The notes: generated by a model from the sequence alone, not told the origin. A stretch of 64,000 bases of DNA from IMGVR_UViG_3300042549_005931:205134-269133, one strand, 5' to 3'. Shown: positions 5,015 to 64,000, counted from the first letter of the stretch. Translations and numbers: made by a program.

Positions 5015-5017
5015 CAA

Positions 5018-49247: not shown

Positions 49248-49251
49248 TGTT

Positions 49252-49440
49252 ATGATGAATAGTTTAAAAAAATCTTTGTTGTTTGGTGGGGTAATCATAT
49301 CCTTTATTGGAATTTTATATCACGTTATCCAAATGATATCAACGAATGAGTTTGTTCATTTTGTATGTTTCTTTTTATGGATGGTTATTAGTGGTGGTCT
49401 TGTCCTATGGTTTGGTCACGAAGAAAATAAGTATTCTTAG
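49252..49440 (+). CDS. small 2-TM protein
   Basis: Two hydrophobic segments. Confidence 0.65.
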   Translation: MMNSLKKSLLFGGVIISFIGILYHVIQMISTNEFVHFVCFFLWMVISGGLVLWFGHEENKYS

Positions 49441-49480
49441 TTCGATTTTTTGTGTTTAATTTTTGTTGTTAGCGATTTTT

Positions 49481-49515
49481 AAAAATCCCTCGGTCTTATA
49501 GGTCGGGGGATTTTT
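49481..49515 (+). terminator. intrinsic terminator (near-copy at 51049-51081)
   Basis: AAAAATCCCTCG-GTCTTATAGGT-CGGGGGATTTTT. Confidence 0.75.
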
Positions 49516-49928
49516 GTTTAAGGAGAATTCTCTACAAGGTTGTAAAGGTGAAAAACTTACCGGGACAATATACCCCGGTAACATATTTTCAGGAACCTGT
49601 TGGTGAGGTCATCGGAACCTTCCGATAGTGTAACGGGAACCTTCCGTAAATTACTCAACCTGGTAATGTTTATCACCCGGACGACCGGTTAATAATTTCT
49701 CAAAAAAAATGTAACCTGGTAATGTTTTCGTGAAGAGAAAAAGTTTTTTCTGTTTTCATTTTTCAACCTGGTAATGTTTTTAAACAAAAGGGGACGTCTG
49801 GTTTTTTTCTTATTTAGAATGAATATAAATTTCATGGGGGTATTGTGTATTCAAGATAAAATCGTTATATTTGTTCACGGTTTTAAAGTAAACCTCAACA
49901 TCGGAAATGGTTCCGAGTTGTCACTCTA

Positions 49929-50237
49929 ATGTTTAATGTTATGGTCTATACCAAAGAAATTATCCAAGAGAAGTTGTCATCAGACATTCGTTGGATTGAG
50001 AGAGGTGTTCTTGTTTTGTTCGGTCGTCAAACCGAGGATGAGAAATCTTCACAAGTTACCAAGTGGGAAAATGGTCGTGGGTTCAATAGTTCAGATAGTC
50101 GTTATCTGACTTATGTTTCAAAGTACCTAATGGGTGGTCGTCATCTATCGGGTAGACATCTTGAAAAGGTGTCCTTGAAGTTACCAAAGTATTGGAAACA
50201 GATTCAAGAAGAAATTCAATTAAAGGGGGGTAGTTAA
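49929..50237 (+). CDS. early phage protein (RQTEDE...NGRGFN motif)
   Basis: 102-aa ORF; no Ala. Confidence 0.75.
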   Translation: MFNVMVYTKEIIQEKLSSDIRWIERGVLVLFGRQTEDEKSSQVTKWENGRGFNSSDSRYLTYVSKYLMGGRHLSGRHLEKVSLKLPKYWKQIQEEIQLKGGS

Positions 50238-50711
50238 CCCCTCTTTTTTTGTGTCTGAAGTGAAAACTTTACCGGGATGATAACTTATATGGTTTAAGGA
50301 ATTATCGTGTCTTAAATCAAAGATTCATCCTGGTAAAGTTTGTCTGGTTCTCATCTGGTTTTTTTTCTGTGTGTTTGGTAATGTATCCTGGTAAACTTTT
50401 GTTTATTTTCCGGTCCGGATGTAACCTTACATCTATTGGTAATACAACCTGGTAAAGTTTATGGGACGAGAAAAAAAATATCATAATATTCTTGTTTTAT
50501 ATACCGGTTTGCCCTACCTTTGTATTGTACCAAATGAGATAATGAAATGAAATAGTCGAAACACAAACTGACAAATAAAAAATAAAAGAAGGAGATGAGG
50601 TTGTTAAAGTTTACCGGGTTGAAAAAGCTTCACCGGTCAGGAACCCTCATAACTTTACCAGGATAAATCCGTCTAAGAAGAAAACAATCACACATTAAAT
50701 TTATAAAACGT

Positions 50712-51023
50712 ATGTATATTACCTTAACTAATTCAAAGTCAAAAAGAAAAACTATTATCAATTGGGGACAAGTTCATTCTTGTTATGAGTTGTTGGATAG
50801 AGAAACGAGAAGTAGAGTAACTAAGATTAACTTTAGTAAAGATAGTTACATCATTGTATCGGAGAAGTTGGAGGACATCCACAAACTATTAACGAAATTA
50901 AACTTTGGTTTATCCCAAGATGTTGAGTGGGATAGTGAACCGAATTTCGATGAGGTTATCGAAGATGAGTATAACACGAACCGTAGAGGAAATTACCGGG
51001 AACGTGATTACAATAGATTTTAG
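50712..51023 (+). CDS. early hypothetical protein (possible FlbD-like small beta domain)
   Basis: YITLT...IIN...TKINF...YIIVSE; no Ala. Confidence 0.6.
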   Translation: MYITLTNSKSKRKTIINWGQVHSCYELLDRETRSRVTKINFSKDSYIIVSEKLEDIHKLLTKLNFGLSQDVEWDSEPNFDEVIEDEYNTNRRGNYRERDYNRF

Positions 51024-51255
51024 ATTGTCAAAAGAGTAGTGTAGATTAAAAACCCTCAATCTTATAGGTTGGGGGTTTTTTGTCGCCTTTAGAAAAAAGG
51101 TGTATTACACTATGGGGGTATTGTATTACACATAAGGGTCGTATTACGTATCCCGGTAAAATAAGGTACCAGGTCCTGACGGTCATGGTCTTGAAAATAA
51201 ATTTATTATGGAGTGTTGTATATTAAGAGAATAGTGTTATATTTGTGAGAACAAA

Positions 51256-51585
51256 ATGATAAATGATATGAGAACTTTTTCAAGAACTTACTACACAGAG
51301 AAACTGAACATTACGATTAGAATAAAAAGAGATGAATTATGTTCGATGGGTTGTCGATTGACAATAAAAGATAGAATGAAAAGAGATTATTGGGGTATGG
51401 ATAGAATTGTTTATTCACAATTTTACAACGATAAGAAGATGTTTACAAAATATCGGAGACAAATGATTGAAACAAAAGTACCGGGAAAGGTGGTTAATGA
51501 AATCATTGACGATATTAAGATGAACCTTAGGTTTGAAAAAGTTGTGGTGTATCAACCAATCGAAACAAAAATGTTTTGGGATTAA
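51256..51585 (+). CDS. early hypothetical protein
   Basis: 109-aa ORF; no Ala. Confidence 0.7.
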   Translation: MINDMRTFSRTYYTEKLNITIRIKRDELCSMGCRLTIKDRMKRDYWGMDRIVYSQFYNDKKMFTKYRRQMIETKVPGKVVNEIIDDIKMNLRFEKVVVYQPIETKMFWD

Positions 51586-51741
51586 TTACCGGGATTTTAT
51601 CCCGTATGAGGTTATCCCGGTAAATTAATGAACCGGGTCCTGACCCGGTCATGGTTGTTATTTAGAATCATTATAAATTTCATTGGGGTATTGTATATTA
51701 AATTAAAAGAGTTATATTTGTATCAATTAAATGATAATGAT

Positions 51742-52551
51742 ATGAAACTAAATGACAAATCCTTAATTAATGTATTGGACAGTAAAGGGTTCAAAGAACA
51801 CCATTTATCGTGGACACAAAAAAATGTTGAGTATTTTTTTACTCACTATGATAAGTTCATGGAAAAATATGGTGATGATAATATTTTTGAGAATTTTTCT
51901 TGTAAAGAGTATTTTTATTCACAAAAAGTTACAAGAAGATTAATTTTTTCAAAAAAGTCTTTGAGTAATTTGGATAACTACCAAGTACCAAAAGAAATAA
52001 GAGTGGAAGTATTAAGAACATTACCTAATCGAGTGGACTTGATACAATTAAATAATGATGAAGTAGTAAAGTATGTAAAAACCGATAAAATGGTTTGTGT
52101 TACTTTTAATATCGAAGATAACCATACTAATGAAATCAAAACGTTTTTCTTTTCAATCAATTTAGAAACGGGTTATGTTTCGTATGATAATTACGATTAT
52201 CAAACTAATAGAGAGATTGAGTTTAATGAAATGAAAGAAAAGTATTACAACAAGTTTATGGTTGTGGTTACTTATTTGGAATTAACCCCCGTTACTTATT
52301 CAATCATTGAGGGTCAAAGAAGTTACGGAACAAAGAAAGAAGATAAGGTAAAGAACGAAACAAATAAACGTTTCATTATGGTAAAAACTAATTGGAACGT
52401 GGAAACAATTAGTCTATTCGATATTCATGTTCGAGGTCATTGGAGATTACAACCTCACGGAGTAGGTCGTTCACAATACAAGTACATCTACATTCAACCT
52501 TTTGAAAAAGGTATTACAAGAAGATTATCACAAAGAGAGTTGGTTTCGTAA
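51742..52551 (+). CDS. early protein with C-terminal VRGHWR motif
   Basis: Restarted at MKLNDK; 269 aa; no Ala. Confidence 0.75.
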   Translation: MKLNDKSLINVLDSKGFKEHHLSWTQKNVEYFFTHYDKFMEKYGDDNIFENFSCKEYFYSQKVTRRLIFSKKSLSNLDNYQVPKEIRVEVLRTLPNRVDLIQLNNDEVVKYVKTDKMVCVTFNIEDNHTNEIKTFFFSINLETGYVSYDNYDYQTNREIEFNEMKEKYYNKFMVVVTYLELTPVTYSIIEGQRSYGTKKEDKVKNETNKRFIMVKTNWNVETISLFDIHVRGHWRLQPHGVGRSQYKYIYIQPFEKGITRRLSQRELVS

Positions 52552-52736
52552 CCAACTTTTTTTTTGTCCTGAGATGGAACAATTTACCGGGATGTTCTAA
52601 AAGTATTACGTCCCGGTAAACTAATTACCTGAGACTCATCTCAAGTTGGTCAAAAAAAAATTAAATTATTTTTTCATATTGTGTTGTATATTAATTTATT
52701 ATGACTTATATTTGTTCACACAAAACAAATAATGAA

Positions 52737-52940
52737 ATGGAAAAAGTTAATGTAGTCCAAACAAGGTACAAGAATCTCACTAATGGTATGAGAGGTACGT
52801 TCAAATTATCCGATGGTACACAAACCAAATTCGAGGTATTCGACAATGGGGAAGTGAAACAAACGGGTACAACCGAAGCTAATCTGTCGGTAACATTCCC
52901 ACACTTAATTGAGTTAGTTCACTTTTTCACCAACCAATAA
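52737..52940 (+). CDS. early hypothetical protein
   Basis: Restarted at MEKVNV. Confidence 0.65.
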   Translation: MEKVNVVQTRYKNLTNGMRGTFKLSDGTQTKFEVFDNGEVKQTGTTEANLSVTFPHLIELVHFFTNQ

Positions 52941-53033
52941 AAATGAAAAGTTTACCGGGGTGGTTAATAGAATTCATAGAATTCCTATTACTCTTATGTG
53001 TATTTATATCTTATTCAGTTAAACTTATCTATA

Positions 53034-53222
53034 ATGGAAAAGACACAACTAATCGGTAAGAGAATCCGAATCAATCACATGGACGACATGTTACCCGTAC
53101 CTGATGGGACAGAAGGGATAATTACCGGGATTGACGACATCGGACAAATACAAGTGAAATGGGATAATGGAAGTACCTTATCCGTAATAGATGATATTGA
53201 TGACTACGAAATCTTAAACTAA
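53034..53222 (+). CDS. DUF4314-like protein
   Basis: GTEGIITGIDDIGQIQVKWDNGSTL. Confidence 0.8.
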   Translation: MEKTQLIGKRIRINHMDDMLPVPDGTEGIITGIDDIGQIQVKWDNGSTLSVIDDIDDYEILN

Positions 53223-53395
53223 TGAACGAACAATTTGTAAAATACATAATGGATATGTTAGAAACTTATCCACAACATAGAAACGATATTCGAGATTTGT
53301 TCAGACTTTGTAAGGACGAAATTAGGGAGGGTGGTTCCCCACAACACGAAATGGACTTATGTCGTAATGACATTGAGGAGTTGGTGAAGGGTTAG
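53222..53395 (+). CDS. 57-aa early protein
   Basis: TAATG overlap; MNEQFVKYIM...ELVKG*. Confidence 0.65.
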   Translation: MNEQFVKYIMDMLETYPQHRNDIRDLFRLCKDEIREGGSPQHEMDLCRNDIEELVKG

Positions 53396-53558
53396 AAAGT
53401 TTACCGGGATAAAGTCTGTATTACTTGTCCCTATCGTATTACATCCTGGTAATATTTTTCCCATCTCCTCGATGAGTGGAGTAAAAAAAATATATCATAT
53501 AATACTTGTTAATATTATAATTGTTTTATAATTTTACTAAACAAAAAATGATATTATA

Positions 53559-54056
53559 ATGAAAAAAAATCAATTAAAAGGTATTTTTACTGAATTAAAT
53601 GAAACTATCACACGTAAGAGTGCATTTAATTCTTTTATTGAAACGGAGAACATTTCAACCGATGTTACTTTGGAAATGTCAAGAATTGGTCTCATTCGTA
53701 AAAATGCATATAAACAATTACAAGAATTAAAAACTGATTATATCAATCTGATTAACGACAAGAAGGTTAAAGAATTGTTTGAGAAGTTTGAGAAGTTAGA
53801 AACTGCAATTGTCCAACATAGAAGTATATTAGCGACAGAAGTTAAATTGGGTTTAATAAATCAAAAGAGAGGTAGAAGTGAAACAAGTTACGTAATTGCT
53901 CGAGCACCCTTCTATCACCCAAACAAAGTGAAATCAGAAATTTCTGTGTATTTAGGTAAGACCGAAATTTTAGGTAATGATTTGGTAAAGTTATCCAATG
54001 ACAATGAGTTTATGAAGAGAGCTGAATTAGAATTGGTTTCATCAATGTTGCGTTAA
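53559..54056 (+). CDS. hypothetical protein, compositional outlier
   Basis: 165 aa with 7 Ala, unlike its neighbours. Confidence 0.7.
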   Translation: MKKNQLKGIFTELNETITRKSAFNSFIETENISTDVTLEMSRIGLIRKNAYKQLQELKTDYINLINDKKVKELFEKFEKLETAIVQHRSILATEVKLGLINQKRGRSETSYVIARAPFYHPNKVKSEISVYLGKTEILGNDLVKLSNDNEFMKRAELELVSSMLR

Positions 54057-54271
54057 AGATATTGACAATAAAACTTTACCGGGACAACGTCCCAATATAG
54101 TTACATCCTGGTAAAGTATTTGGTGTCGTTACATCAGTCGGTTCTTCCTTATTTAGAATGATTATAAATTTCATTAAAGTATAAAAATATTTTAGGTTAT
54201 ATTAGTATAAGTCGTATTAAATGACGACCTTTGTTAAGTCGATAATGACACAGAACCTTAAAAGTTTTAAA

Positions 54272-54829
54272 ATGGAAACTTTAATGAATGAGAATGGTGT
54301 AATCACCAAAAATGATTTGGTCTTAATTACTAAGACACAAATGTTAGGTCTGTTTTTGGGAGTAACAAAACCCGAAATGATTAACTTGATAACGGAAACC
54401 AATGTAAAAACCAACAAAACGGGTAACCCCTATTACAAACAACTTGTGAAGAAGTCGAAGTGTAACTATTTGTTATGTTCGGATTATACTACAAGGGTAA
54501 ATAATAACCGAGTTAAAGAGGGTAAAGAAACGGATTTTGTTTCAGAAAAGTCAAGTGGTAAATTTCATATTTCCCCTTGTGTATTGATGGATGAAAAAAC
54601 ACAAACAAAACACTACCTAATGGTGGAGAGGTTTGTGGAGGTTAAACCAAAGGTTCAGTATTTTTTTAATGAAGAACCGATTGAGTTTGATATGTTCAAA
54701 CAATTCTTATCACCAATTAGTGAAAACAAATCACAAGGGTTGGATAGGAAAGTAATTGTAAATACTCCTTTGTTCGATTCGATTGTAGGATTCACTTTCA
54801 GAGGTCGTAAGTATAGTGTAATTGAGTAG
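54272..54829 (+). CDS. early hypothetical protein
   Basis: Restarted at METLMNE; no Ala. Confidence 0.72.
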   Translation: METLMNENGVITKNDLVLITKTQMLGLFLGVTKPEMINLITETNVKTNKTGNPYYKQLVKKSKCNYLLCSDYTTRVNNNRVKEGKETDFVSEKSSGKFHISPCVLMDEKTQTKHYLMVERFVEVKPKVQYFFNEEPIEFDMFKQFLSPISENKSQGLDRKVIVNTPLFDSIVGFTFRGRKYSVIE

Positions 54830-54856
54830 TTCGTTTTTTTCATAGTTTGGTGGTTA

Positions 54857-54888
54857 AAAGGGTAGGACAATGTTCTACCTTTTTTTTT
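54857..54888 (+). terminator. shared cassette terminator (near-copies at 56174, 57253, 60884)
   Basis: AAAAGGGTAGGACAATGTTCTACCTTTTTTTT. Confidence 0.8.
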
Positions 54889-55090
54889 GTCTGATGTTCT
54901 GAGATGGTAAAAGTTTACCGGGATAAGTTAAGTATTACACGGGGGACGAAGAAGACTGGAAAACTTTACCAGGATGGATTTGTCCCGGTAAATTTCCTAC
55001 CTGTCGTTACTGTGTCAGGATTTGTCAAAAAAAATTAAATCTTTTTTGGTATAAGTGTTGGAATTGTAATACCTATTTTGTAATTTAGAT

Positions 55091-55450
55091 ATGTCAAATA
55101 AAAACAATGATATGAATACGAAAACCGTTTACAATGTAATGAGAGGAATTGAACCTTTCACACAAAGAGAATTTGATGTTCACCAAACATTAAAAGTTCT
55201 AACCCACAACAAACTTATTTGGATAACGTGGGGAGTCAATCTTCGAAGTATCTGTGGACTTGAACGTAAGTGTCTTGTCTTCAAACCCAACGGACAATAT
55301 TTTAAAGACTTTGTCTGTGTAACTCTTGGATGGGATGATGTTTACCAGGTTCATTTTATGAACGACAAGTACAAAGTCGTTAAGTCAATTGAAGGTGTGT
55401 ACTTTGATATGTTGGTGGATGTGATTGACGGATACATTGAAACTCGATAA
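55091..55450 (+). CDS. early hypothetical protein
   Basis: 119-aa ORF; no Ala. Confidence 0.72.
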   Translation: MSNKNNDMNTKTVYNVMRGIEPFTQREFDVHQTLKVLTHNKLIWITWGVNLRSICGLERKCLVFKPNGQYFKDFVCVTLGWDDVYQVHFMNDKYKVVKSIEGVYFDMLVDVIDGYIETR

Positions 55451-55571
55451 TTTACCGGGAGGAGAAATCCTCCCGTTAACAAGAGCTACGGTACCAAACT
55501 TTACCGGGATAAAAATAAGTTTTGTAAAATGAAATTAATGTTATATCTTTGTAACCCAAACAAATGACACA

Positions 55572-56153
55572 ATGAATATTAGAGAAGAAAGAATTGACAA
55601 TTACATTTTGAGATTATTTTATGATGAGAGTCCGACGAATCCTCGAGAGGACTACAATCTTACCAGGATGGTGTGTTTCCACAAGAGATACGACTTGGGG
55701 GATAGTCACGACTACAAACACGATGACTACGATAGTTGGGATGAGATGGAGAAGAACATTACCAGGATGGAGAACCCTATTGTTATCAAACCCTTGTATA
55801 TGTACGAACATGGTGGAGTTACTATTAAGACAAGTCCGTTTGGTGATAGATGGGATAGTGGTCAAATTGGTTTTGTCTTTATCCGTAAGGATGATGTACG
55901 GAATGAATTCTCAATCAAGAGATGTGGTCAGAACATGGTGGAGAGATGTGATGTATTACTTGAAGGGGAGGTTGACGTGTATGACAAGTACCTACAAGGA
56001 CAAGTATATGGGTATGAGATAGGTAAAATAAATGAAGATGGTCAGGAAGAAGGTTTAGAAAGATGTGGAGATTATCTTGATGAAGACCAATGTGTTCACG
56101 ATGGAATGGTATCATTGAATTGGTTTAAAGAAAATGAGAAAGTATTGGTTTAG
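55572..56153 (+). CDS. early acidic protein (LYMYEHGG...RWDSGQIG motif)
   Basis: 193-aa ORF; no Ala. Confidence 0.75.
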   Translation: MNIREERIDNYILRLFYDESPTNPREDYNLTRMVCFHKRYDLGDSHDYKHDDYDSWDEMEKNITRMENPIVIKPLYMYEHGGVTIKTSPFGDRWDSGQIGFVFIRKDDVRNEFSIKRCGQNMVERCDVLLEGEVDVYDKYLQGQVYGYEIGKINEDGQEEGLERCGDYLDEDQCVHDGMVSLNWFKENEKVLV

Positions 56154-56398
56154 GTTTTCCTTATTATTGTTTAAAAGGGTAGGACGATGTTCTACCTTTT
56201 TTTTTGTATTACACTTGAGGAGTCTGAAGTCAGGACCTGAACCAAAAGTTTACCGGGATGAGATGTATTACCCCGGTAAAGTTATGAGTCGGAGAAAAAT
56301 TATTTGGTCTTCCAAAAAATAATTAAATTAATTTTTGACAAGTAGTAGGATATTAACTTACTATCAGTTATATTTGTGAACATTTAAACAATAATGAT

Positions 56399-56644
56399 AT
56401 GTCAGTACAACAAAAAGAAATGATTGAAAAGTGGGACAAGGTTTCACAAGATGTTTTGAAAGGTAGAACTATTGTAGAAGTTCGTTACCTTAACGATGAG
56501 GAAATGGAAATGATGGGTTGGTATAATAGACCAATTTGTTTTTTCTTGGACAATGGTGTTAGTTGTATCCTATCATCTGATGATGAGGGGAACGATGGTG
56601 GAGTTTTATTCTACGGAGAAAATGGAGTGTTACCAACCCTTTAA
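56399..56644 (+). CDS. early hypothetical protein
   Basis: 81-aa ORF; no Ala. Confidence 0.72.
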   Translation: MSVQQKEMIEKWDKVSQDVLKGRTIVEVRYLNDEEMEMMGWYNRPICFFLDNGVSCILSSDDEGNDGGVLFYGENGVLPTL

Positions 56645-56655
56645 ACAATAATGTT

Positions 56656-56871
56656 ATGTTAATTACAAGAACAAGTCAGATTTCAAGAACCGATTTTACA
56701 ATGGAGTTGGATATTACCTACGACCAATTGGATAGGATTAATAATCGTTACGAGACCAAAGAACTCATTCAGAACATTGTACCAAACTTGTCGAAGGAGG
56801 AACGGGAGTTTTTAATTACCGGGATAACCCCAAAAGAATGGAATGAATTGTTTAACCCAATTGATGTGTAA
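56656..56871 (+). CDS. early hypothetical protein
   Basis: 71-aa ORF; no Ala. Confidence 0.72.
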   Translation: MLITRTSQISRTDFTMELDITYDQLDRINNRYETKELIQNIVPNLSKEEREFLITGITPKEWNELFNPIDV

Positions 56872-56872
56872 A

Positions 56873-57013
56873 ATGGAAGTTAAAATCGAAGACCTTATCA
56901 AATTACTTGAAGAACAAGTTAGTAAGGGAGTAACCAAAGTACAACTTAATGGTACTTTAATGTCCGAAGAGGATGGTAACTTAATTATTTTGTCCACCGA
57001 AAAACAAATGTAA
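56873..57013 (+). CDS. 46-aa early protein
   Basis: MEVKIEDLIKLLEEQ...; fills the gap in the operon. Confidence 0.65.
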   Translation: MEVKIEDLIKLLEEQVSKGVTKVQLNGTLMSEEDGNLIILSTEKQM

Positions 57014-57014
57014 A

Positions 57015-57230
57015 ATGAAAGTAGTATCAGTCCGTATTACAGAACAACCAAAAGACTTGTTCGACCCACTACCAAGAGTATTCGTAACAACCGAAGATGG
57101 TGTGGAACATTTCCTTTACCAATATTACCCCGATGAGATTAGTTTCACGGAGAGTGAGTTGATGGGATTAACATTAGAAGAGTGTGGTAGATTATATACC
57201 GAGAAAGATATTAGATATTTGAGGTCGTAG
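57015..57230 (+). CDS. early hypothetical protein
   Basis: 71-aa ORF; no Ala. Confidence 0.72.
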   Translation: MKVVSVRITEQPKDLFDPLPRVFVTTEDGVEHFLYQYYPDEISFTESELMGLTLEECGRLYTEKDIRYLRS

Positions 57231-57540
57231 TGGTTTTTTTGTTTGTGGTTATAAAAGGGTGGGACAATGTTCCACCTTTTTTTATGGACTGAAGTCAGGA
57301 ATCTTCTGAGATGGAAAAGTTTACCGGGATGGTGGAGTGTATTACGTCCTGGTAATGTTTGTCTGGCGCAGCTCTGGTCCATCAGGTTATTTATCCCGGT
57401 AAACTTATGAGTCACAGAAAAATTCTTGGATGTTCCAAAAAAAATAATTGTTTTTTTTTCATATAACATTTGTAATTGTAATATTAATTGACTAATTTAG
57501 TGTTGTAGATAATGGTATCTACATTAACCCCTTTAATGTT

Positions 57541-57876
57541 ATGAGTACAATGGTAGTAAATCAAGAAGTCGAGTTTTCAATGGATGATATTGATAACGAG
57601 GTGTATTTTGAAATCACGGGTAAAATGGTTTTCAACGAGATTTTGGTTCAAGAAATTTTTGATGTGATTGTGGAATCGGATTGGTTCGTTCAAGGTAACA
57701 AGACCGAAGGTCTATTGTCAATCGGTCAGAGATTGAAAAATGGTATCGAGGTTAATCTCGATTGGAAGTCAATCACAATGGGTGAGGATTGGGATTCGGA
57801 TGAAACGGAAGAACACGAAAAGGATTTTATCCTATCGTGGGATGAGGATAATAAGATTGTCCTTACACCAAGGTAA
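57541..57876 (+). CDS. early acidic protein
   Basis: 111-aa ORF; no Ala. Confidence 0.72.
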   Translation: MSTMVVNQEVEFSMDDIDNEVYFEITGKMVFNEILVQEIFDVIVESDWFVQGNKTEGLLSIGQRLKNGIEVNLDWKSITMGEDWDSDETEEHEKDFILSWDEDNKIVLTPR

Positions 57877-58079
57877 TACGAAGGGAGAACGAAAGTTCTC
57901 CTTTTTTTTGTCCCTGATGGTAAAAGTTTACCGGGATACCCTGGTAAAGTTTTCTACCCGTCACTGTCGACAGGTGATAAAAATTAATTAATTTTTTTTG
58001 TTACAAGGTGTTGTTTATATCGAAAATTAAACTATCTTTGTGTGTGGATAATGGTGTCCACAATAATCCAATAAACAAA

Positions 58080-58988
58080 ATGGAAACACAACTCGTTTTA
58101 AATGACCGTATTACACAATTATTAGACCAAACCAACCTGAATTGGAAGGTGAAAGAATCACCTATCTATACTAAGGTAGATGACAATGAGATTTTAGTAT
58201 CAGATAAAAAAGTATTACTTCGTGAAGACACACACGAGATTTTAGGTTTACACTCTGATGGATATGTACCGTTCCAAAATTATGAGATGTTAGAATTACT
58301 TGATAAGGTTTCTCAACAAACGGGTTTACCAATTCATAGAGGTGGTTTGTTTGGTAACGGTAAGAAGGTGTATATCCAACTTCAATCACACGAGTTCAGA
58401 ATTCAGAATGTTGGTGGAGTTTGGGACACTATCTCAGGATATGTTACCGGGATAAACTCATTCGATGGTTCCACTTCATTATCATTTGGTCCTAGTACCA
58501 AAACAATCTCATGTCAAAATACTTTCTTTGGAGCTTATAAGGAAATGGGTACAAAGATTCGTCACACAAAAAACATGGGGGTAAAGATTGACGAGGTGTG
58601 TAGACGAATTGAAGGTGTGTTGGTAGAGGAGAGAAACAACTTCGAAAATATCAAGAAGATGTCTGAAAGTCCTTTTGAGATGAACACATTAGATTCTGTA
58701 ATACGAACTATGTTTGACCTTGACCGTAATGTGGATTTAAAAGATACTGATAAATTATCGGGGGTAACTCGTAATAAATTATCTCGATTCTATATCGACC
58801 TTAACGGTGAACTTCGTGAGAAGGGTAACAATGTTTGGGGATTGATGTCGGGTGTAACAAAATATACTACTCACTCTGTGATTAAGGGTGATAACTCCGA
58901 GAAAAAGATGTTTGGTAGTACGGGTAATCGTGAGAGAAAGATTTTCTCCGACCTTGTAAACTATACCAACCACTTGGAACTCGTTTAA
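58080..58988 (+). CDS. DUF932/DUF945-family protein
   Basis: LNWKV...LLREDT..ILG...YVPFQN...GKKVY...NSFDGS...TISCQNT; 1 Ala in 302 aa. Confidence 0.8.
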   Translation: METQLVLNDRITQLLDQTNLNWKVKESPIYTKVDDNEILVSDKKVLLREDTHEILGLHSDGYVPFQNYEMLELLDKVSQQTGLPIHRGGLFGNGKKVYIQLQSHEFRIQNVGGVWDTISGYVTGINSFDGSTSLSFGPSTKTISCQNTFFGAYKEMGTKIRHTKNMGVKIDEVCRRIEGVLVEERNNFENIKKMSESPFEMNTLDSVIRTMFDLDRNVDLKDTDKLSGVTRNKLSRFYIDLNGELREKGNNVWGLMSGVTKYTTHSVIKGDNSEKKMFGSTGNRERKIFSDLVNYTNHLELV

Positions 58989-58992
58989 GATT

Positions 58993-59160
58993 TGTTGTCG
59001 ATAGGTGAAAACCTAAATTAACTCACCGATGTCTTGGTGAGAGAAGAATAAGGATAAGTATTACAGGGTGTCCCTACCGACAATGTTGGACTTAAAATAT
59101 TCACCCCGTATTACCGAGTGTGGGAGGTTTTGTAAAATCATTAACCCACATCCTTATTAA
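58993..59160 (+). ncRNA. putative pseudoknotted RNA downstream of the DUF932 gene
   Basis: TTGTCG/CGACAA, TAGGT-GAAA-ACCTA, AATAAGGAT/ATCCTTATT, TGTGGG/CCCACA; terminator at 59168-59198. Confidence 0.5.
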
Positions 59161-59415
59161 AGACACTAAAACCCTCTACCCAACGGAGGGTTTTTTTATT
59201 GCCCTCAGGAACCTGAAGACAGGACCTGGGTGAAAAGTTTACCGGGATATCCTGGTAATGTTTCCACCATGCGCTGGAGCTGCGCTGTAATCGTCCCGGT
59301 AAAGTATTGGAGCTGCGCTGTACTGTGTTAATTAAAAAAATTATTTAACAAAGTAGTATGATATTAACTTAATAGTGTTATCTTTGTAAATCGTTTCACA
59401 TAAACAATAAATGAT

Positions 59416-59751
59416 ATGAAAAGTGGTAACATTGTGGATTTAAGTAACCTCGATACACGGGATTTAATCGAGGAGTTACAGAACAGGGGGTATATGACCG
59501 GTTTGTTATTTTGTAGGGAGGATGTAGACCTTCAACTTGAAAGTTTAAATGATGGGTATCGTGGTCTAAACCTTACCTTGACTGATGAGGAAAAGGACGA
59601 AATCCTTGAAGGAGACTTACCTATTGATTGGACTTGTGAAAGAATCAATGAGAGTATCTATGATGGTGTCTTTAATTTTTTCAGTGAGGAGATTAATAAG
59701 TGGGAGGAAAAAGATTTGGGTGAGAAGATGAGAAACGGATTTGGAAACTAA
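59416..59751 (+). CDS. early acidic protein
   Basis: 111-aa ORF; no Ala. Confidence 0.72.
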   Translation: MKSGNIVDLSNLDTRDLIEELQNRGYMTGLLFCREDVDLQLESLNDGYRGLNLTLTDEEKDEILEGDLPIDWTCERINESIYDGVFNFFSEEINKWEEKDLGEKMRNGFGN

Positions 59752-60031
59752 TAAATTACCAGGATATATGGAAACATTTCAATTTTACAAAGACGAAAAG
59801 ATGACGATTTGGTATCGTGGTAAGTTCGAGGTCGAAGCTAACTCGGAGGAGGAAGCTATCGAGATGGTTAAGGAACTTGAAAAGACAAATAAGTTAGATA
59901 ACTACGATGTTTATTGGGAAATTTTGGATGACACTATGGAAGGGTTAACGGTGGGAGATAATGGTGGTTATTCCACAGAAGAAATATACACAGGTAGTGG
60001 AGACATAATTTGGGCCAATGGAAAGGAATAG
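59741..60031 (+). CDS. early acidic protein
   Basis: FEVEANSEEEAIE motif. Confidence 0.72.
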   Translation: METNKLPGYMETFQFYKDEKMTIWYRGKFEVEANSEEEAIEMVKELEKTNKLDNYDVYWEILDDTMEGLTVGDNGGYSTEEIYTGSGDIIWANGKE

Positions 60032-60242
60032 TGTAATCAAGAAACTCAGGGACGGTGAACCATTGGAACTTTACCGGGATGGATTGTTCATTACTCTCCA
60101 ACTAAACAAACGACATAAAAGAATTTGTTGGGAACGATGGGTATCTGTTAACAAAACCTCTTGGATGAATTGGAATTTATTCTTATCTTTACGGGACGTA
60201 ATACAAATCTATAATGATTATGAAAAAAGAAAAACTGATTAA
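60018..60242 (+). CDS. early hypothetical protein
   Basis: Overlapping operon ORF. Confidence 0.65.
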   Translation: MERNSVIKKLRDGEPLELYRDGLFITLQLNKRHKRICWERWVSVNKTSWMNWNLFLSLRDVIQIYNDYEKRKTD

Positions 60243-60543
60243 GAAAATCCAACAGGTGTTGGATGACTTGGACACTCGTAGTATTAATGTACATGAGTTA
60301 GACACGGAATCATCGATTAACATTGGTGATTTGGCCAACGGTGATATAACGGAATGTGTAGAAACACTTCGTTACGATGATGTATCCACCATAGTTTACC
60401 ACAACGGTAACGAGATAGAGTGGAGTGATAAAGATTACCGGGACTTACCTCTCAATACATTAGAGGAAATCCTTGAAGCTTTACAATACTATAAAATAGG
60501 TTTTGACAAAACATTAGACGTAATACGAGATGAAAACTATTAA
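60220..60543 (+). CDS. early acidic protein
   Basis: Overlapping operon ORF, restarted at MKKEKL. Confidence 0.68.
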   Translation: MKKEKLIKKIQQVLDDLDTRSINVHELDTESSINIGDLANGDITECVETLRYDDVSTIVYHNGNEIEWSDKDYRDLPLNTLEEILEALQYYKIGFDKTLDVIRDENY

Positions 60544-60823
60544 AACGATTGACCAAATTATTTCAGAGAGTGTAGAAGAGCACGTACTAACTTGTATTGA
60601 CCGGGTTAATAAGGGATTTAAAGTTGTAGAGGTTGAGGTTCCATTAGAATATTCATCCAAAGTGTTTACCTTACTAAACGATGAGATTAGTTATGGTGTT
60701 AGAATGTATGGGTGGAAGTTCGGAGTTTTCTCACAGGGAGAGTTCGAAGGTAAGATGGCTCAAACTATTTTAAAAGAAAACAATAGAGTGTTTAAAAGAT
60801 ATTTTTTAAAATACACTTTATAA
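60530..60823 (+). CDS. early hypothetical protein
   Basis: Overlapping operon ORF. Confidence 0.68.
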   Translation: MKTIKTIDQIISESVEEHVLTCIDRVNKGFKVVEVEVPLEYSSKVFTLLNDEISYGVRMYGWKFGVFSQGEFEGKMAQTILKENNRVFKRYFLKYTL

Positions 60824-61090
60824 TTTGTAAGATGTTACTTATATTTTGATTACAAATTATTTGTGTTCATATTTTGTGTTTGGGAAAAGGGTTGGCAGAA
60901 ATGTCAACCTTTTTTTGTGCTCGTGTATTACCTGTGCACTGTACCTGCACAGCAGTGAAGTTTACCGGGACAACCTGGTAATGTATTACCTGCAGCAACT
61001 GCAGAGCCTTCAGGTAAAAAAAGTTATTAAATAATGTTTGTTATATTGAAAACTATTTTGTAATTTTAATCCATCAAATAAACAAATGAT

Positions 61091-61858
61091 ATGGAATTTA
61101 AAAACTTAACACAAACAAAAAAGGATTTAGGACTTAACTATTTAGGTTCGGTTAGTAAAACCACCAAACATATTAAGTCAATTGAGTACAACGAATTGGT
61201 TTACACTATCTACTTGTCACCTGCAGACAGTAGTGGGTATGAGGTGTGTCCATTACGAAACGACGAATGTACCGACCTTTGCCTTAATGAGTCCGGTATG
61301 AACCGAATGAGTATGAATGACGAATTGATTAATAGAAGTCGTATCAAAAAAACTAAATTGTTTTTTGAGAACCGTGAATACTTTGTCAAGTGGATGGTAT
61401 ACGAAATCGAATCCACCAAACTAAAAGCTGAAAAACTTGGTATGAGTTTTAGTGTACGTATCAATAATACTTCAGACATTAATCCTTTATCATTTTATCT
61501 TGAAGTTAACGGAAAAAAATTAAATGTATTGGATTTATTCCCCGATGTACAATTTTACGATTATACAAAAGTTCCCAACCGAATGAAGTTAATGATGTTA
61601 TATCCTAATTACGATTTGACATTTTCTTATGACGGTTATAATAAAGATACTTGTCTACAGATGTTAGAAAATAATGTTAGGGTGGCCGTTGTGTTTGATA
61701 AGTTACCGGGAGAATTATGGGGGTACAAAGTTATCGATGGTGACTTGTATGACATGAGATATCGAGATGAGAAAAATGTAATTGTCGGACTGAAGTTCAA
61801 ACGAGTTCGAAAGAAACTACATAAGGATTATAAGTTCGTAATACAAAACCCACAATGA
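61091..61858 (+). CDS. GP88-like protein (Cys-motif, radical-SAM-like)
   Basis: EVCP...CTDLCL...VRINNTSD...QFYDYTK...YDLTFS...IDGD...VGLKFK. Confidence 0.78.
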   Translation: MEFKNLTQTKKDLGLNYLGSVSKTTKHIKSIEYNELVYTIYLSPADSSGYEVCPLRNDECTDLCLNESGMNRMSMNDELINRSRIKKTKLFFENREYFVKWMVYEIESTKLKAEKLGMSFSVRINNTSDINPLSFYLEVNGKKLNVLDLFPDVQFYDYTKVPNRMKLMMLYPNYDLTFSYDGYNKDTCLQMLENNVRVAVVFDKLPGELWGYKVIDGDLYDMRYRDEKNVIVGLKFKRVRKKLHKDYKFVIQNPQ

Positions 61859-62108
61859 TGTGGGTTTTTTTATGCACTCAGGAATCTGAAGGCAGGACCT
61901 GGATGAAAAGTTTACCGGGATATCCTGGTAAAGTTCCATTTGGGAAACACAGCAGCGCAAAACCATCCCGGTAAAGTTTCCCTGGCAACAACAGCAGCGC
62001 TGACTTCAGAAAAAAAATTAAAATATTTTTTACCTATGTGTTGTGATTTAGTAAAAATGTATTATCTTTGTACAAGTAATAAGTCAAACAATTTAAACTT
62101 TTAATGTT

Positions 62109-62657
62109 ATGGGATTAGATATGTATCTATCGAAAAAGACCTATGTTAAACAATGGTCACACGACAAACCCGAAGAACAATTCGAGGTGTCTGTTAAACG
62201 AGGTGGTAAACCTTTCAAGAAAATCGAATCAAGTCGGGTTTCTTATGTTACGGAAGAATTGATGTATTGGAGAAAAGCCAATCAGATTCATGGATGGTTT
62301 GTACACAACACACAGGAAATTGTGGAGGAAGTCAAATACTATGTAACCAAAGAAGATTTGGATAACTTACTTGATGTTTGTAAACAAGTATTGGATGTTA
62401 TGAGTAAGTCCAAGATGAAGACAGTCCAAGTTCGTAGTGGTTGGAGTGGTGGTGAGGAAACTTATTCCGATGTTGAAACTTACGATTGTGAGGATGAGAT
62501 TAGAGAATTACTCCCACCAACAGAAGGATTCTTCTATGGTTCTTACGAGATTGATGAGTGGTATAAACAAGCCATCGAGGAAACTGTGGAGTTCTTGGAA
62601 AAAGAATTACCAAAGTCCGATGAACACGATGACTTCGAGTATTACGCGAGTTGGTAA
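62109..62657 (+). CDS. conserved phage protein (MGLDMY...YWRKANQIHGWF motif)
   Basis: 182-aa ORF with a recognisable phage motif. Confidence 0.75.
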   Translation: MGLDMYLSKKTYVKQWSHDKPEEQFEVSVKRGGKPFKKIESSRVSYVTEELMYWRKANQIHGWFVHNTQEIVEEVKYYVTKEDLDNLLDVCKQVLDVMSKSKMKTVQVRSGWSGGEETYSDVETYDCEDEIRELLPPTEGFFYGSYEIDEWYKQAIEETVEFLEKELPKSDEHDDFEYYASW

Positions 62658-62719
62658 TATAAAAAAATAATCGGGATATCGTTTGGAATAATGGTATCCC
62701 TTTTATAATTTTGTAAACG

Positions 62720-62968
62720 ATGAAAGATTTATTCAATAATTCAAGACCAGTTCAGATTGAAATCGGTGAATGGTGGTTCAACGGGAGATTCATCCAAAAA
62801 CAGGTGCATCCGTTGCTTAGTCCTTATGTATCCTTTAATGATAATGAGGATGGTTATATGGTTCAAACTCACACAACCTTTAAGGAAGCAACTAAGTATT
62901 GTTTGGATAATCCTTGTAATACCCCACAACACCAACCAAAAGATTTTATAAGTTCATTTAAAAACTAA
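62720..62968 (+). CDS. hypothetical protein
   Basis: 82-aa ORF; TAATTTTG upstream. Confidence 0.65.
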   Translation: MKDLFNNSRPVQIEIGEWWFNGRFIQKQVHPLLSPYVSFNDNEDGYMVQTHTTFKEATKYCLDNPCNTPQHQPKDFISSFKN

Positions 62969-62974
62969 TATCAT

Positions 62975-63682
62975 ATGCCCAATTGGTGTAGTAACTATAT
63001 TACGATTTCGGGAGAGGAATCTAATATGAAACCCTTATACGATTTTTTTCGTGAAGGTGAAGAAATAGTCGAAACGTATTACAAACAATTCAGAGAATTC
63101 CGTGAGAACTTTCCTGATGAGGACGCGTTTAACTCAATAGGTATGAAAGAGGTATTCGTTATGTCTACCCTTGTACCTGAGGATGAGGAATTTGAAAAGA
63201 TTAAAGAGAGTGGTCAATATCTGTTATCACCTTACACAGAATTTTGGGGTTGTAAGTGGGACATCCATATTCACGACGGACTAATCACTGAGTGTACTCC
63301 AACAAAGATTCAATTATCACCAATAACCGCTTGGTCACCACCTGAACCATTCTGTAAAAGATTGTCAAAGAAGTATGGTGTTGATGTGGAGATTAGTTTT
63401 TTCGAGGGTGGAGCTAACTTCGCTGGTCGTAGTCGTTTTTCAAACGGAAAAGAAATCGAGAGTGTAATGTATACCTATCGTGAAGGGATGTATTACTTGG
63501 AAACTGAAATTTTTTGGGGGGAGACCTATAGTGATTTAGAATGGATGTTCTGTGAAAATCCAAATATCACATTCGACGAAGTGTTAGGACAGATGTACCC
63601 TTTCGTTAAAGATGAGAATGATATAAAAGAATTAAACGAACTCTATCATAATTTTAAAGTAGATGAAACAACAGGAGAATAA
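62975..63682 (+). CDS. YubB/DUF1281-like ferredoxin-fold protein
   Basis: MPNWCSN...WGCKWD...TAWSPP...FFEGG..FAG. Confidence 0.78.
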   Translation: MPNWCSNYITISGEESNMKPLYDFFREGEEIVETYYKQFREFRENFPDEDAFNSIGMKEVFVMSTLVPEDEEFEKIKESGQYLLSPYTEFWGCKWDIHIHDGLITECTPTKIQLSPITAWSPPEPFCKRLSKKYGVDVEISFFEGGANFAGRSRFSNGKEIESVMYTYREGMYYLETEIFWGETYSDLEWMFCENPNITFDEVLGQMYPFVKDENDIKELNELYHNFKVDETTGE

Positions 63683-63938
63683 ATTGAGAGTAAAGTATAG
63701 TAACTTTCAAACCAATATGAATTTCAACGAGTGGGCACAAACCTTTAAGGTGTCCACTCTTGTCCCTGAACAATTTGATAGATGGGACAGCAAGTTAGAT
63801 AAGTGTAATGAGAGTGAAAAACGAATGATGATTACTTCCATGTATGAGAACGATATCACCATCCCAATCAGTACAAGAATTTTAAGTAGTATAAAACAAT
63901 TAATAAATAAAGAAAGATGTCAAGAGAAAACAGATTAA
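63663..63938 (+). CDS. hypothetical protein
   Basis: Overlapping ORF. Confidence 0.6.
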   Translation: MKQQENKLRVKYSNFQTNMNFNEWAQTFKVSTLVPEQFDRWDSKLDKCNESEKRMMITSMYENDITIPISTRILSSIKQLINKERCQEKTD

Positions 63939-64000
63939 CAGGTGGAGTATTTACCGGGATTGTAGGTACCTCCGAAAAAATTAGTTCATACGATAAGTTT

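What the first reader, a model, noticed from the sequence alone, without database searches (positions are those of the whole stretch)
57365..62000. GpC reappears as concentrated clusters inside spacers next to the repeat motif
Seen: GGCGCAGC (57365), GGAGCTGCGCTG twice (about 59277 and 59309; reverse complement matches GCGCAGCTC), CTGCACAGCAG and CTGCAGCAACTGCAGAGC (60945-61007), and ACAGCAGCGC twice (61949, 61991). Surrounding genes stay GpC-poor, and there are no such clusters in the first 8 kb of the early region. Inference: a second binding-site class, deliberate decoy or modification sites, or staged checkpoints for DNA entry.
Basis: partly seen in the sequence, partly recalled or inferred. 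Interest (0 to 1): 0.62.

Follow-up and report, generated by a model that had tools for sequence, protein, structure and literature searches.

The report
Conserved GC boxes in phage early-gene spacers
In a freshwater jumbo phage whose early-gene block has lost almost every GpC dinucleotide (and so almost every alanine), the few dense GpC clusters are a conserved second motif ("GC box") sitting at a fixed place upstream of early promoters in untranscribed spacers, which suggests they are kept for a function that is still unknown.

Summary
Every quoted word is at its stated coordinate. In window 57,231-64,000, 29 of 55 GpC lie in 597 nt of terminator-to-promoter gaps (P about 1e-16). Gap GpC O/E is about 1, against 0.16 in the flanking genes. 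The left 8.6 kb has none of these clusters.

The clusters are not new arrivals. They are the surviving "GC boxes" of a repeated spacer unit: terminator, pre-box, inverted TTTACCGGGA/TCCYGGTAAA arms, GC box(es), A-tract, Bacteroidota-type promoter.

Related lake phages have the same unit. This includes lineages with different arm sequences. Their box words are related (GAGCTGCGCTGT, ACAGCAGCGC, cores GCWGC and GCGC). The proximal box sits 55-80 nt upstream of the -7 promoter motif in all of them.

A close relative (88% nt identity) keeps 7-9 GpC in three of the four spacers, although the box sequence is reshuffled.

My best reading (about 0.45) is a second recognition element of an upstream promoter/spacer unit. 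It would be kept where the GpC purge is weaker and lost where it is strongest. No binding has been shown.

Rivals are neutral relics in untranscribed DNA, nicking or recombination sites, decoy or modification sites, and entry checkpoints.

The bigger surprise is the context: a 15-kb early module with 0.65% alanine.

The parts
48644..64000 (+). Early-gene module: 31 small + strand ORFs, most behind their own Bacteroidota-type promoter and terminator. It is GpC-purged and nearly alanine-free, and it runs off the contig end.
   Evidence: 3,766 aa with 26 Ala. Ala is 0.65% here against 4.16% in the rest of the genome. Relatives show the module continues about 3 kb further.
57253..57286 (+). Terminator hairpin plus T-run that precedes the 57.3-kb spacer unit.
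   Evidence: Read. It is paralogous to 60886-60919 (family D10).
57320..57403 (.). Arms TTTACCGGGA (57320), TCCTGGTAA (57347) and TCCCGGTAAA (57394), with GC box GGCGCAGCTC (57365-57374) between the 2nd and 3rd arm.
   Evidence: This inner arm plus box is absent in the close relative L132. A population variant carries a different GC box here (table 5c).
59168..59200 (+). Terminator after the DUF932 gene and its 170-nt 3' region.
   Evidence: 10-pair stem plus T-run. An RNA-library contig covers 58959-59132.
59205..59232 (.). Pre-box CTCAGGAACCTGAAGACAGGACCTGG, part of a 74-nt unit shared with 61862-61935 at 89% identity.
   Evidence: family D4.
59238..59303 (.). Tight inverted arms (59238-59259) and a third arm (59294-59303).
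59271..59289 (.). GC box 1, GCGCTGGAGCTGCGCTGTA (5 GpC, 2 GCGC).
   Evidence: L132 keeps GGAGCTGCGCTGT exactly.
59309..59322 (.). GC box 2, GGAGCTGCGCTGTA, 62-67 nt upstream of the -7 motif at 59379-59386.
60886..60916 (+). Terminator before the 60.9-kb spacer unit (one GpC in its loop).
   Evidence: D10, D16.
60934..60955 (.). GC box upstream of the arms (GTGCACTGTACCTGCACAGCAG).
   Evidence: It is homologous to the gtattaccc-GTGCCGCAGC pre-arm box of L126/L123. An ACAGCA insertion variant occurs at 60948.
60961..60982 (.). Tight inverted arms TTTACCGGGAcaaCCTGGTAA.
60990..61008 (.). GC box CTGCAGCAACTGCAGAGCC.
   Evidence: In three other lake runs 61000 T>A and 61005 A>C give CAACAGCAGCGCC, the canonical ACAGCAGCGC box. 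L132 has ACGCAGCAGCGCC here.
61091..61858 (+). GP88-family gene (PF17338) flanked by two box-bearing spacers. It is a cassette that is absent from relatives L123-L126.
61911..61975 (.). Tight inverted arms (61911-61932) and a third arm (61966-61975).
61941..61958 (.). GC box with ACAGCAGCGC.
   Evidence: D18: 18-nt direct repeat, 42-nt spacing. L132 has AACAGCAGCGT.
61983..62009 (.). Proximal GC box (TGGCAACAACAGCAGCGCTGACTTCAG) abutting the A-tract at 62010, 64-69 nt upstream of the -7 motif at 62063-62070.
   Evidence: L132 has AACAGCTGCGCTGACTTCAG.

Best explanation
The GpC clusters are 'GC boxes', a second conserved element of a repeated intergenic unit. The unit reads: terminator, pre-box, inverted TTTACCGGGA/TCCYGGTAAA arms, one to several arm-plus-box repeats, A-tract, Bacteroidota-type promoter. 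The box cores are GCWGC and GCGC, with typical words GAGCTGCGCTGT and ACAGCAGCGC.

I infer that the boxes are recognition sequences in double-stranded, untranscribed DNA for a factor acting on or just upstream of the early promoters. That factor could be an activator, a repressor, or an insulating or architectural protein, from phage or host.

They are useful but dispensable. Where selection against GpC is extreme (the left 8.6 kb of this module, and the relative L137) they were lost or replaced by GpC-free sequence. Where the purge is weaker (right of about 57 kb) they are kept at full density, while the neighbouring genes still lose GpC.

What is shown: the clustering, the homology to boxes in relatives, the fixed position relative to promoters, and retention despite sequence turnover. 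What is inferred: that a protein binds them, and that this affects early transcription.
For: (1) Position. All box GpC lie between a terminator T-run and the A-tract/promoter of the next gene.

(2) Conservation across relatives. Syntenic modules in relatives have the same unit. Group B (L123-L127, DUF932 87-91% aa identity) has GTTGACCGGGG/CCCCGGTSAAC arms followed by GCACGCAGC-type boxes in tandem units of 46-48 bp. L128 has TTTACTGGG arms and L145 has GTACTGGAA arms (GP88 60% aa identity), and both carry GCGC/GCWGC boxes. In L145 these include GAGCTGCGCAGT, GGCTGCGCTGT and GAGCTGCACAGT.

(3) Fixed phase. In lineages A-D the proximal box GpC pile up 55-80 nt upstream of the TAnnTTTG motif, just beyond the A-tract. 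A second peak follows about 46 nt further.

(4) Retention under turnover. The close relative L132 has 7, 7 and 9 GpC in the three main spacers, against 9, 9 and 9 here. The boxes are the least alignable part of those spacers, while terminators, arms and promoters align well. Population variants restore the canonical ACAGCAGCGCC word at 60999-61008.

(5) Differential purge. Relative to unpurged group B, coding GpC density is down about 6-fold in the right zone, but spacer density only about 1.7-fold. In six other partly purged relatives (L134, L135, L136, L139, L145, L146), spacer O/E is 0.75-1.0 against 0.27-0.47 in genes. That is the reverse of what is expected if non-coding GpC were free to be purged.

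(6) GCGC. It is strongly avoided genome-wide: 24 sites in 254 kb against 67 expected. Yet 6 sites sit in these boxes. GCGC is roughly 9-fold denser in spacers than in genes across lineages A-D.
Against: No protein, binding or transcriptional effect has been shown.

The boxes are dispensable. Nine or more promoters in the left zone, and the 57.9-kb spacer, have arms and A-tracts but no GpC. L132 lacks the 57.3-kb box altogether.

Box sequence is poorly conserved. The 62-65% group shows no GCWGC enrichment. Arm-to-box spacing varies from 9 to 20 nt.

The fixed box-to-promoter spacing could be inherited from block duplication of the whole promoter cassette rather than maintained by selection.

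The + strand bias of GCAGC in group B spacers (32 to 7) is also seen in genes (19 to 4), so it is not a property of the boxes.

In L128 the box-bearing spacers coincide with unpurged genes. That fits a regional history as well as it fits a function.
Confidence: 0.45

Rival explanations
1. Neutral relics. The pressure against GpC acts on transcripts, for example through an RNase or another RNA-level agent that recognises GC. GpC would then be tolerated only in the short stretches that are not transcribed, between terminator and promoter. The boxes would be inherited GC-rich filler with no function of their own.
For: All box GpC lie strictly in terminator-to-promoter gaps. The 170-nt 3' region before the 59.17-kb terminator has none. 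Gap O/E is about 1, which is what neutrality predicts. In most partly purged relatives, spacers are 2-fold or more less depleted than genes. RNA-library contigs cover genes and the DUF932 3' region but not the boxes, although coverage is very sparse. Box sequences turn over fast.
Against: The left-zone gaps are equally behind good terminators, yet they have 2 GpC against 42 expected. That points to selection on DNA or on position, not only on RNA. Related box words recur in lineages whose arms have diverged. The box keeps a fixed phase with the promoter. GCGC is avoided genome-wide but concentrated in the boxes.
Confidence: 0.25
2. Sites of a DNA enzyme. The boxes, with their GCGC/GCWGC palindromic cores, would be targets of a phage nicking, homing or recombination activity. 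This could resemble the site-specific single-strand nicks of T5 (reported at GCGC; from memory). It could also promote exchange of gene cassettes between the repeated spacers.
For: Short palindromes are frequent in the boxes: CAGCGCTG, CTGCAG twice, GCGC...GCGC, and in relatives GCGCATGCGC and GTCAGCGCTGAC. GCGC is otherwise avoided in the genome. Cassette gain and loss happens exactly at these spacers. GP88 is present here and in L128 but absent in L123-L126, and L127 has an 818-aa gene inserted after DUF932. Units are duplicated, deleted or permuted between this window and L132.
Against: No candidate nuclease or recombinase was tied to the module. Homologous recombination between the long, highly similar arms, terminators and promoters would explain cassette exchange without the boxes. 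No read-end data are available (table 6, contigs only).
Confidence: 0.12
3. Modification or decoy sites. The boxes would be deliberately kept targets of the same GpC-directed agent that drives the purge, whether a host nuclease or a modification enzyme. Placed in harmless untranscribed DNA, they would soak it up or be modified.
For: This is the only place in the module where the avoided dinucleotide is dense. Twenty percent of all GCGC sites in the genome lie here.
Against: A cut in a spacer is as lethal as one in a gene, so a nuclease decoy makes little sense. No C5-methyltransferase, TGT/DpdA or QueC genes are present in the 269 kb, though the genome is only 81% complete. The most strongly purged zone does without the boxes.
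Confidence: 0.07
4. Staged checkpoints for DNA entry. The arm-plus-box units would pause or ratchet genome internalisation between successive promoter-terminator units, in analogy to the T5 first-step-transfer stop signal or the transcription-driven entry of T7.
For: The purge is graded along the module and relaxes near the DUF932-GP88 interval in several lineages. That fits an order-of-entry or order-of-expression gradient. Early-injected regions are known to decide restriction sensitivity (PMC12455610).
Against: The units occur at nearly every spacer, including the box-free left zone. Termini and entry polarity are unknown, and in relatives' contigs the module is internal. Nothing links the boxes rather than the arms to entry.
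Confidence: 0.05
5. Selfish GC clusters. These would be short mobile GC-rich palindromic elements that insert into AT-rich spacers, like the GC clusters of yeast mitochondrial DNA.
For: They are GC-rich islands in AT-rich spacers. Copy number varies between close relatives, and similar words appear in different spacers.
Against: The boxes have a fixed phase with arms and promoter. They have no defined ends or target duplications. They are confined to one module.
Confidence: 0.04

Closest known systems
PeSL (promoter-early stem-loop) repeats of T4-type phages (from memory: Arbiol et al. 2010)
   Same: Repeated intergenic units made of an early promoter and a stem-loop/terminator bracket small early genes of unknown function. 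Gene cassettes come and go between them. Both features are seen here.
   Different: Here the unit also carries long inverted arms in one to five copies and GC boxes. The promoters are of the Bacteroidota TTG/TAnnTTTG type, and the whole module is GpC-purged.
Restriction-site avoidance in the first-injected genome region (T5 first-step-transfer DNA, T7, Autographiviridae; PMC12455610)
   Same: An early module with anti-defence-like genes (DUF932, GP88, DUF1281_C) is far more depleted of a short word than the rest of the genome.
   Different: A whole dinucleotide is avoided rather than a defined site, to the point of removing alanine. The clusters in this finding are the opposite of avoidance. 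Entry order is not known here.
Upstream promoter elements: UP-element A-tracts with adjacent activator or repressor sites
   Same: The proximal box abuts an A-tract and sits at a constant 55-80 nt from the -7 motif.
   Different: No factor is known. Many promoters of the same module work without a GpC-containing box. Units are tandemly iterated with a 46-48 bp period.
T5 injection-stop region and GCGC-associated nicks (from memory: Heusterspreute 1987; Nichols and Donelson 1977)
   Same: Clusters of repeats and palindromes occur in an early region. GCGC is the salient word.
   Different: Nicks, termini and two-step transfer are all untested here. The units are spread over 15 kb, not concentrated at one boundary.
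GC clusters of yeast mitochondrial intergenic spacers
   Same: Short GC-rich, partly palindromic islands in AT-rich non-coding DNA, with variable copy number.
   Different: The boxes are phased with the arms and promoters, and there is no sign of transposition.

Membership tests
Conserved cis-element (binding-site class) of the spacer unit | Recurs at homologous positions in related genomes | tested here: met
   Boxes are present in the corresponding spacers of L132, L123-L127, L128 and L145. The exception is the 57.3-kb box, which is deleted in L132.
Conserved cis-element (binding-site class) of the spacer unit | A definable sequence consensus | tested here: inconclusive
   The words GAGCTGCGCTGT, ACAGCAGCGC and CGCAGC are shared by lineages A, B, D and part of C. 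However, the boxes are the most variable part of the spacers, and group C shows no GCWGC enrichment.
Conserved cis-element (binding-site class) of the spacer unit | Fixed geometry relative to the promoter | tested here: met
   GpC peaks 55-80 nt upstream of TAnnTTTG in lineages A-D. Block duplication could also produce this pattern.
Conserved cis-element (binding-site class) of the spacer unit | A protein that binds it | not testable with these tools
   No binder was identified. The module proteins are almost all of unknown function.
First-injected, restriction-proof region (T5 FST / T7 type) | Stronger depletion of target words than in the rest of the genome | tested here: met
   GpC O/E is 0.04-0.35 here against about 0.6 elsewhere. 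This applies to the module, not to the boxes.
First-injected, restriction-proof region (T5 FST / T7 type) | Location at the genome end that enters first | not testable with these tools
   The contig is truncated on the right. The module is internal in relatives' contigs. Only contigs, not reads, were available.
Known structured RNA families (Rfam) | Match to a covariance model | tested here: not met
   Only one sub-threshold hit (15.8 bits against a gathering score of 88), at 49481-49515.
Intrinsic terminators | GC-rich hairpin followed by a T-run | tested here: not met
   The boxes themselves are not called. The true terminators lie upstream of them. Two tight arm hairpins (57927-57948, 61911-61932) score as terminator-like.
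Phage single-subunit RNA polymerase promoters | A T7-type RNA polymerase gene in the genome | tested here: inconclusive
   PF00940 was not found, but the control search rang nowhere and the genome is 81% complete. Two sigma-70-family genes are present. Arm-to-box spacing varies from 9 to 20 nt, which is unlike a -35/-10 pair.
Modification target sites | A cognate cytosine or guanine modification enzyme encoded by the phage | tested here: not met
   No PF00145, PF01702 or PF06508 was found. Only a Dam-like and an N6/N4 methyltransferase are present. The genome is incomplete.
Chi-like polar sites | Strand-specific orientation in spacers | tested here: not met
   In the window and L132, GCAGC and GCTGC are 6 to 6. 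The bias in group B is shared by coding DNA.

The most novel reading that the evidence does not exclude
The boxes are deliberately retained targets of the same unknown agent that has driven GpC, and with it alanine, out of the early genes. One example would be a GCGC/GCWGC-directed nicking, modifying or sensing activity that is allowed to act only in untranscribed spacers. There it would gate early promoter use, DNA entry or cassette recombination. Under this reading the clusters are the functional counterpart of the purge, not an exception to it.
Probability: 0.1. Interest if true: 0.85.

Novelty: new variant of a known kind. Interest (0 to 1): 0.55.

Why it matters
Repeated promoter/terminator units around small early genes are known from other large phages. 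A second, GpC-rich element held at a fixed place upstream of early promoters has not been described as far as I could find. Here it survives inside a block where selection has removed nearly every other GpC and nearly every alanine.

The boxes also give a handle on the much larger puzzle of what drives that purge. Whether they are tolerated because they are untranscribed, or kept because they are needed, separates an RNA-level cause from a DNA-level cause. Either answer would be informative about phage-host conflict in freshwater Bacteroidota.

Tried and rejected
- **Megablast against the phage collection**: window 57,000-62,400 gave no hit.
- **DNA pattern scans of IMG/VR**: the arm pair returned only single chance or coding matches. 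The exact 23-mer returned nothing.
- **Protein-seeded scan of IMG/VR with DUF932**: nothing found. Relatives came instead from the protein word search and the metagenome scan.
- **Recent import of the right zone from unpurged relatives**: rejected. Nucleotide identity to L123/L126 is 70-83% all along the module, with no younger block.
- **A specific NGCN context for the purge**: rejected. All ten contexts are 4-12-fold depleted in the module.
- **GCAGC strand polarity as a box property**: rejected. Genes show the same bias.
- **Boxes as hairpins or palindromes in general**: no consistent inverted repeat was found upstream of the A-tracts.
- **G.U-wobble argument for a + strand RNA hairpin of the arms**: dropped, because L132 has the wobble on the other strand at 57.9 kb.
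- **Arms plus box as a -35/-10 pair**: rejected because the spacing is variable.
- **Rfam**: nothing.
- **PHROGs and Pfam**: no function for the module proteins beyond DUF932, GP88 and DUF1281_C.
- **Literature searches**: nothing on GpC-free or alanine-free phage early regions.
- **Read laying**: only contigs were available, so ends, nicks, strand and transcript limits could not be read.

Full report
**What the window is.** The window is the last 64 kb of a 269,133-bp IMG/VR virus contig. The contig is linear and CheckV puts it at 81% complete. The best holders are lake-water metagenomes. Genes in window 48.7-64 kb are small, all on the + strand, and mostly separated by a hairpin-plus-T-run terminator and a promoter of the TTG...TAnnTTTG type. 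From published work on Bacteroides and Flavobacterium promoters (my own knowledge), this points to a Bacteroidota host. The phage has two sigma-70-family genes and no detectable T7-type polymerase. Recognisable families in the module are DUF932, GP88 and DUF1281_C.

**The background against which the finding stands.**
- GpC has an odds ratio of about 0.6 over the whole genome. In the terminal module it falls to 0.04-0.35.
- The 31 ORFs of 48,644-64,000 encode 3,766 residues with only 26 alanines. Eighteen of the first 20 ORFs have no GpC at all, in any frame.
- Alanine is 0.65% in the module against 4.16% in the rest of the genome.
- All NGCN contexts are depleted 4-12-fold, so the dinucleotide is the target, not one restriction site and not alanine as such.
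- I found no description of such a region in the literature library.

**Checking the observation.**
- The module holds 70 GpC: 36 in 4.1 kb of spacers and 34 in 11.3 kb of genes.
- Right of 57,231 there are 55 GpC. Of these, 29 lie in 597 nt of terminator-to-promoter gaps (binomial P 9e-17).
- The three main gaps have GpC at the level their base composition predicts (9/8.2, 8/6.3, 9/8.4). The genes around them are at O/E 0.16.
- Left of 57,231 the equivalent gaps have 2 GpC against 42 expected.
- The clusters are built from a few related words. GAGCTGCGCTGT, allowing two mismatches, occurs three times in 269 kb, and two of those are the 59.28/59.31-kb boxes.
- AGCWGCGC, GCGCAGC and CAGCGCTG occur nowhere else in the genome.
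- GCGC is itself strongly avoided: 24 sites in 254 kb where a Markov model expects 67. Six more sites sit in these boxes.

**Anatomy.** Each spacer is a copy of one composite unit:
- a terminator;
- a CTGAAG/CAGGACCTGG-type pre-box;
- a first arm, AAAGTTTACCGGGA;
- one or more inverted arms, TCC(C/T)GGTAAAGT, each followed by a short linker and a box;
- an A-tract;
- the promoter.

The arm motif gives 42 hits at up to one mismatch against 4.7 expected. Genome-wide it is confined to this module. The GpC of the finding are the boxes of this unit, so they are not inserted at random near the repeat.

**Relatives.** DUF932 homologues led to syntenic modules at 87-91% amino-acid identity (L123-L127) and at 61-63% (L128, L129). 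GP88 led to a close relative, L132 (98% aa, 88% nt over 4.8 kb), and to further lineages (L133-L146, L165).
- All of these carry the same unit, but with lineage-specific arms: GTTGACCGGGG/CCCCGGTSAAC in L123-L127, TTTACTGGG/CCCAGTAA in L128, and GTACTGGAA/TTCCAGTA in L145.
- All have GpC-rich boxes between arms, and between the last arm and the A-tract.
- In L123-L127 the arm-plus-box unit repeats up to five times with a 46-48 bp period. The box core there is (GCAC/GCCC)GCAGC.
- L145 has GAGCTGCGCAGT, GGCTGCGCTGT and GAGCTGCACAGT. These are the same word family as in the window, although its GP88 is only 60% identical.
- GCGC is about nine-fold denser in spacers than in genes when one representative per lineage is counted.
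- In every lineage the proximal box GpC fall 55-80 nt upstream of the -7 motif, immediately beyond the A-tract. A second peak lies about 46 nt further out, and there is almost nothing in between.

**Are they kept or merely left over?**
- In L132 the three main spacers carry 7, 7 and 9 GpC, against 9, 9 and 9 here. Terminators, arms and promoters align almost perfectly there. The boxes are rearranged or replaced by other members of the word family.
- Contigs from three other lake samples change 61000 T>A and 61005 A>C. This turns the window's CAACTGCAGAGCC into CAACAGCAGCGCC, the same word as the 61.95-kb and 61.99-kb boxes.
- Sequence turnover with retention of GpC-rich words is what arrays of binding sites do. 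It is hard to reconcile with free decay under a pressure strong enough to remove alanine from proteins.
- Relative to the unpurged group B, gene GpC density in the right zone has dropped about six-fold, but spacer density only about 1.7-fold.
- Six other partly purged relatives show the same asymmetry: spacer O/E 0.75-1.0 against gene O/E 0.27-0.47.

Several facts argue that the boxes are not indispensable:
- The 57.3-kb box is deleted in L132.
- The left zone of this genome and the relative L137 do without GpC in their spacers.
- In L128 the box-bearing spacers coincide with unpurged genes.

**History of the purge.**
- Group B modules are not GpC-depleted at the DNA level (O/E 0.75-0.9). Their proteins are nevertheless alanine-poor (2.7-3.3%), and their DUF932 has 2-6 Ala in about 300 residues.
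- More distant GP88 neighbourhoods are normal, at 5.5% Ala.
- I infer that the purge is old in this phage group, has relaxed in some lineages, and is most extreme in this genome.
- In several lineages it is strongest at the left of the module and relaxes around the DUF932-GP88 interval. That is where the window's clusters begin.
- Identity to L123/L126 is uniformly 70-83%, so the right zone is not a recent import.

**Mechanism.**
- *Best reading (0.45).* The boxes are a second recognition element of an upstream promoter/spacer unit in untranscribed duplex DNA. They would be bound together with, or next to, whatever reads the arms. They give a benefit large enough to be kept where the cost of GpC is moderate, and they are given up where it is extreme.
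- *Main rival (0.25).* The cost of GpC is paid at the RNA level, so untranscribed gaps are simply exempt. The exact confinement of GpC to the gaps fits this. The GpC-free gaps of the left zone do not, unless those gaps are transcribed.
- *Lesser rivals.* These are targets of a nicking or recombination activity (palindromic GCGC/GCWGC cores, cassette turnover at these spacers), decoy or modification sites, entry checkpoints, and selfish GC clusters.
- *What is missing.* No C5-methyltransferase, DpdA/TGT or QueC gene was found. A Dam-like and an N6/N4 methyltransferase and a thymidylate-synthase-family gene are present. Rfam gave nothing. The public runs are held only as contigs, so transcript limits, nicks, ends and modification could not be read. 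RNA-library contigs lie on genes and on the DUF932 3' region only. The contig lacks the right end of the module, and the relatives' right flank is not elsewhere in it.

**Comparison with known systems.**
- The unit works most like the promoter-plus-stem-loop repeats that bracket early genes of T4-type phages. It shares their cassette turnover: GP88 is present here and in L128 but absent in L123-L126, and an 818-aa gene is inserted in L127.
- The purged module fits the idea that the first-expressed or first-injected region must itself be proof against host nucleases (PMC12455610; T5 and T7 from memory).
- The GC boxes have no described counterpart that I could find.
- I rate the finding a new variant of a known kind, with moderate interest in itself. 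Its context, the GpC- and alanine-free early module, is the more remarkable feature and deserves its own follow-up.

Noticed in passing
window 48,644-59,415 (and more weakly to 64,000): The early module is almost free of GpC in all reading frames, so its proteins are almost free of alanine: 26 Ala in 3,766 aa, or 0.65% against 4.16% elsewhere. Relatives range from equally purged (L128, L137) to DNA-level relaxed but still Ala-poor (L123-L127). I found no description of this in the paper library.
   Followed up: partly
window 53559-54056 (+): One 165-aa ORF inside the purged zone has 8 GpC and 7 Ala, while its neighbours have none. It has no Pfam or PHROG match. It may be a recent acquisition, or a protein that cannot do without alanine.
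   Followed up: no
whole contig G000 (1-253,700) versus window boxes: GCGC is strongly avoided genome-wide: 24 sites against 67 expected by a Markov model. CGCG and CCWGG are also low (O/E 0.55). CCWGG and CCGG are abundant in the module only because of the arms.
   Followed up: partly
window 57504-57523 and 58043-58062: Operator-like palindromes TGTAGATAATGGTATCTACA and TGTGGATAATGGTGTCCACA lie just downstream of the -7 promoter motif of two genes. The second contains a perfect DnaA-box-like TGTGGATAA.
   Followed up: no
window 49,130-49,180 and 50,515-50,570: Two promoters are followed by a paralogous leader (accaaatg.ataatgaaatga...) with only a 2-3 codon ORF. It may be a small RNA or a leader peptide.
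   Followed up: no
window 61091-61858; L123/L126 12.6-12.9 kb; L127 5410-7866: There are gene-cassette differences exactly at the repeated spacers. GP88 is present here, in L132 and in L128, but absent in L123-L126. L127 has an 818-aa gene inserted after DUF932.
   Followed up: partly
window 58443, 60066-60079, 60430-60443, 61702: Copies of the arm motif ((G/A)TTACCGGGA) also occur inside coding sequences of four genes.
   Followed up: no
L123 16710-17485, L126 16870-17701, L128 18884-19773 (beyond the window's end): In relatives the module ends in a non-coding region of about 800 nt, dense in GTATTAC, GTATGACA and CTTCATCCCGTAT repeats. L126 then has an IS605-type TnpB gene. This region is missing from the truncated contig of the window.
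   Followed up: no
G000:C1:1907-3055 (-) and 4600-5136 (-): A thymidylate-synthase-family ORF (393 aa open frame) lies next to an N6/N4 DNA methyltransferase match that has two in-frame stops. A Dam-like methyltransferase is at 71377-72117.
   Followed up: no
L123 1593-1898 and 3636-4382: Relatives' modules encode a protein resembling the C-terminal domain of the RNA polymerase alpha subunit (PF03118) and a weak ParB_N protein. No counterpart was seen in the window by nucleotide comparison. Either could be relevant to reading the A-tract or arm elements.
   Followed up: no
window 47723-48643 (-): The first minus-strand gene left of the module is also partly depleted (8 GpC against 24 expected; 4 Ala in 306 aa). 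The purge therefore starts slightly outside the + strand transcription units.
   Followed up: partly
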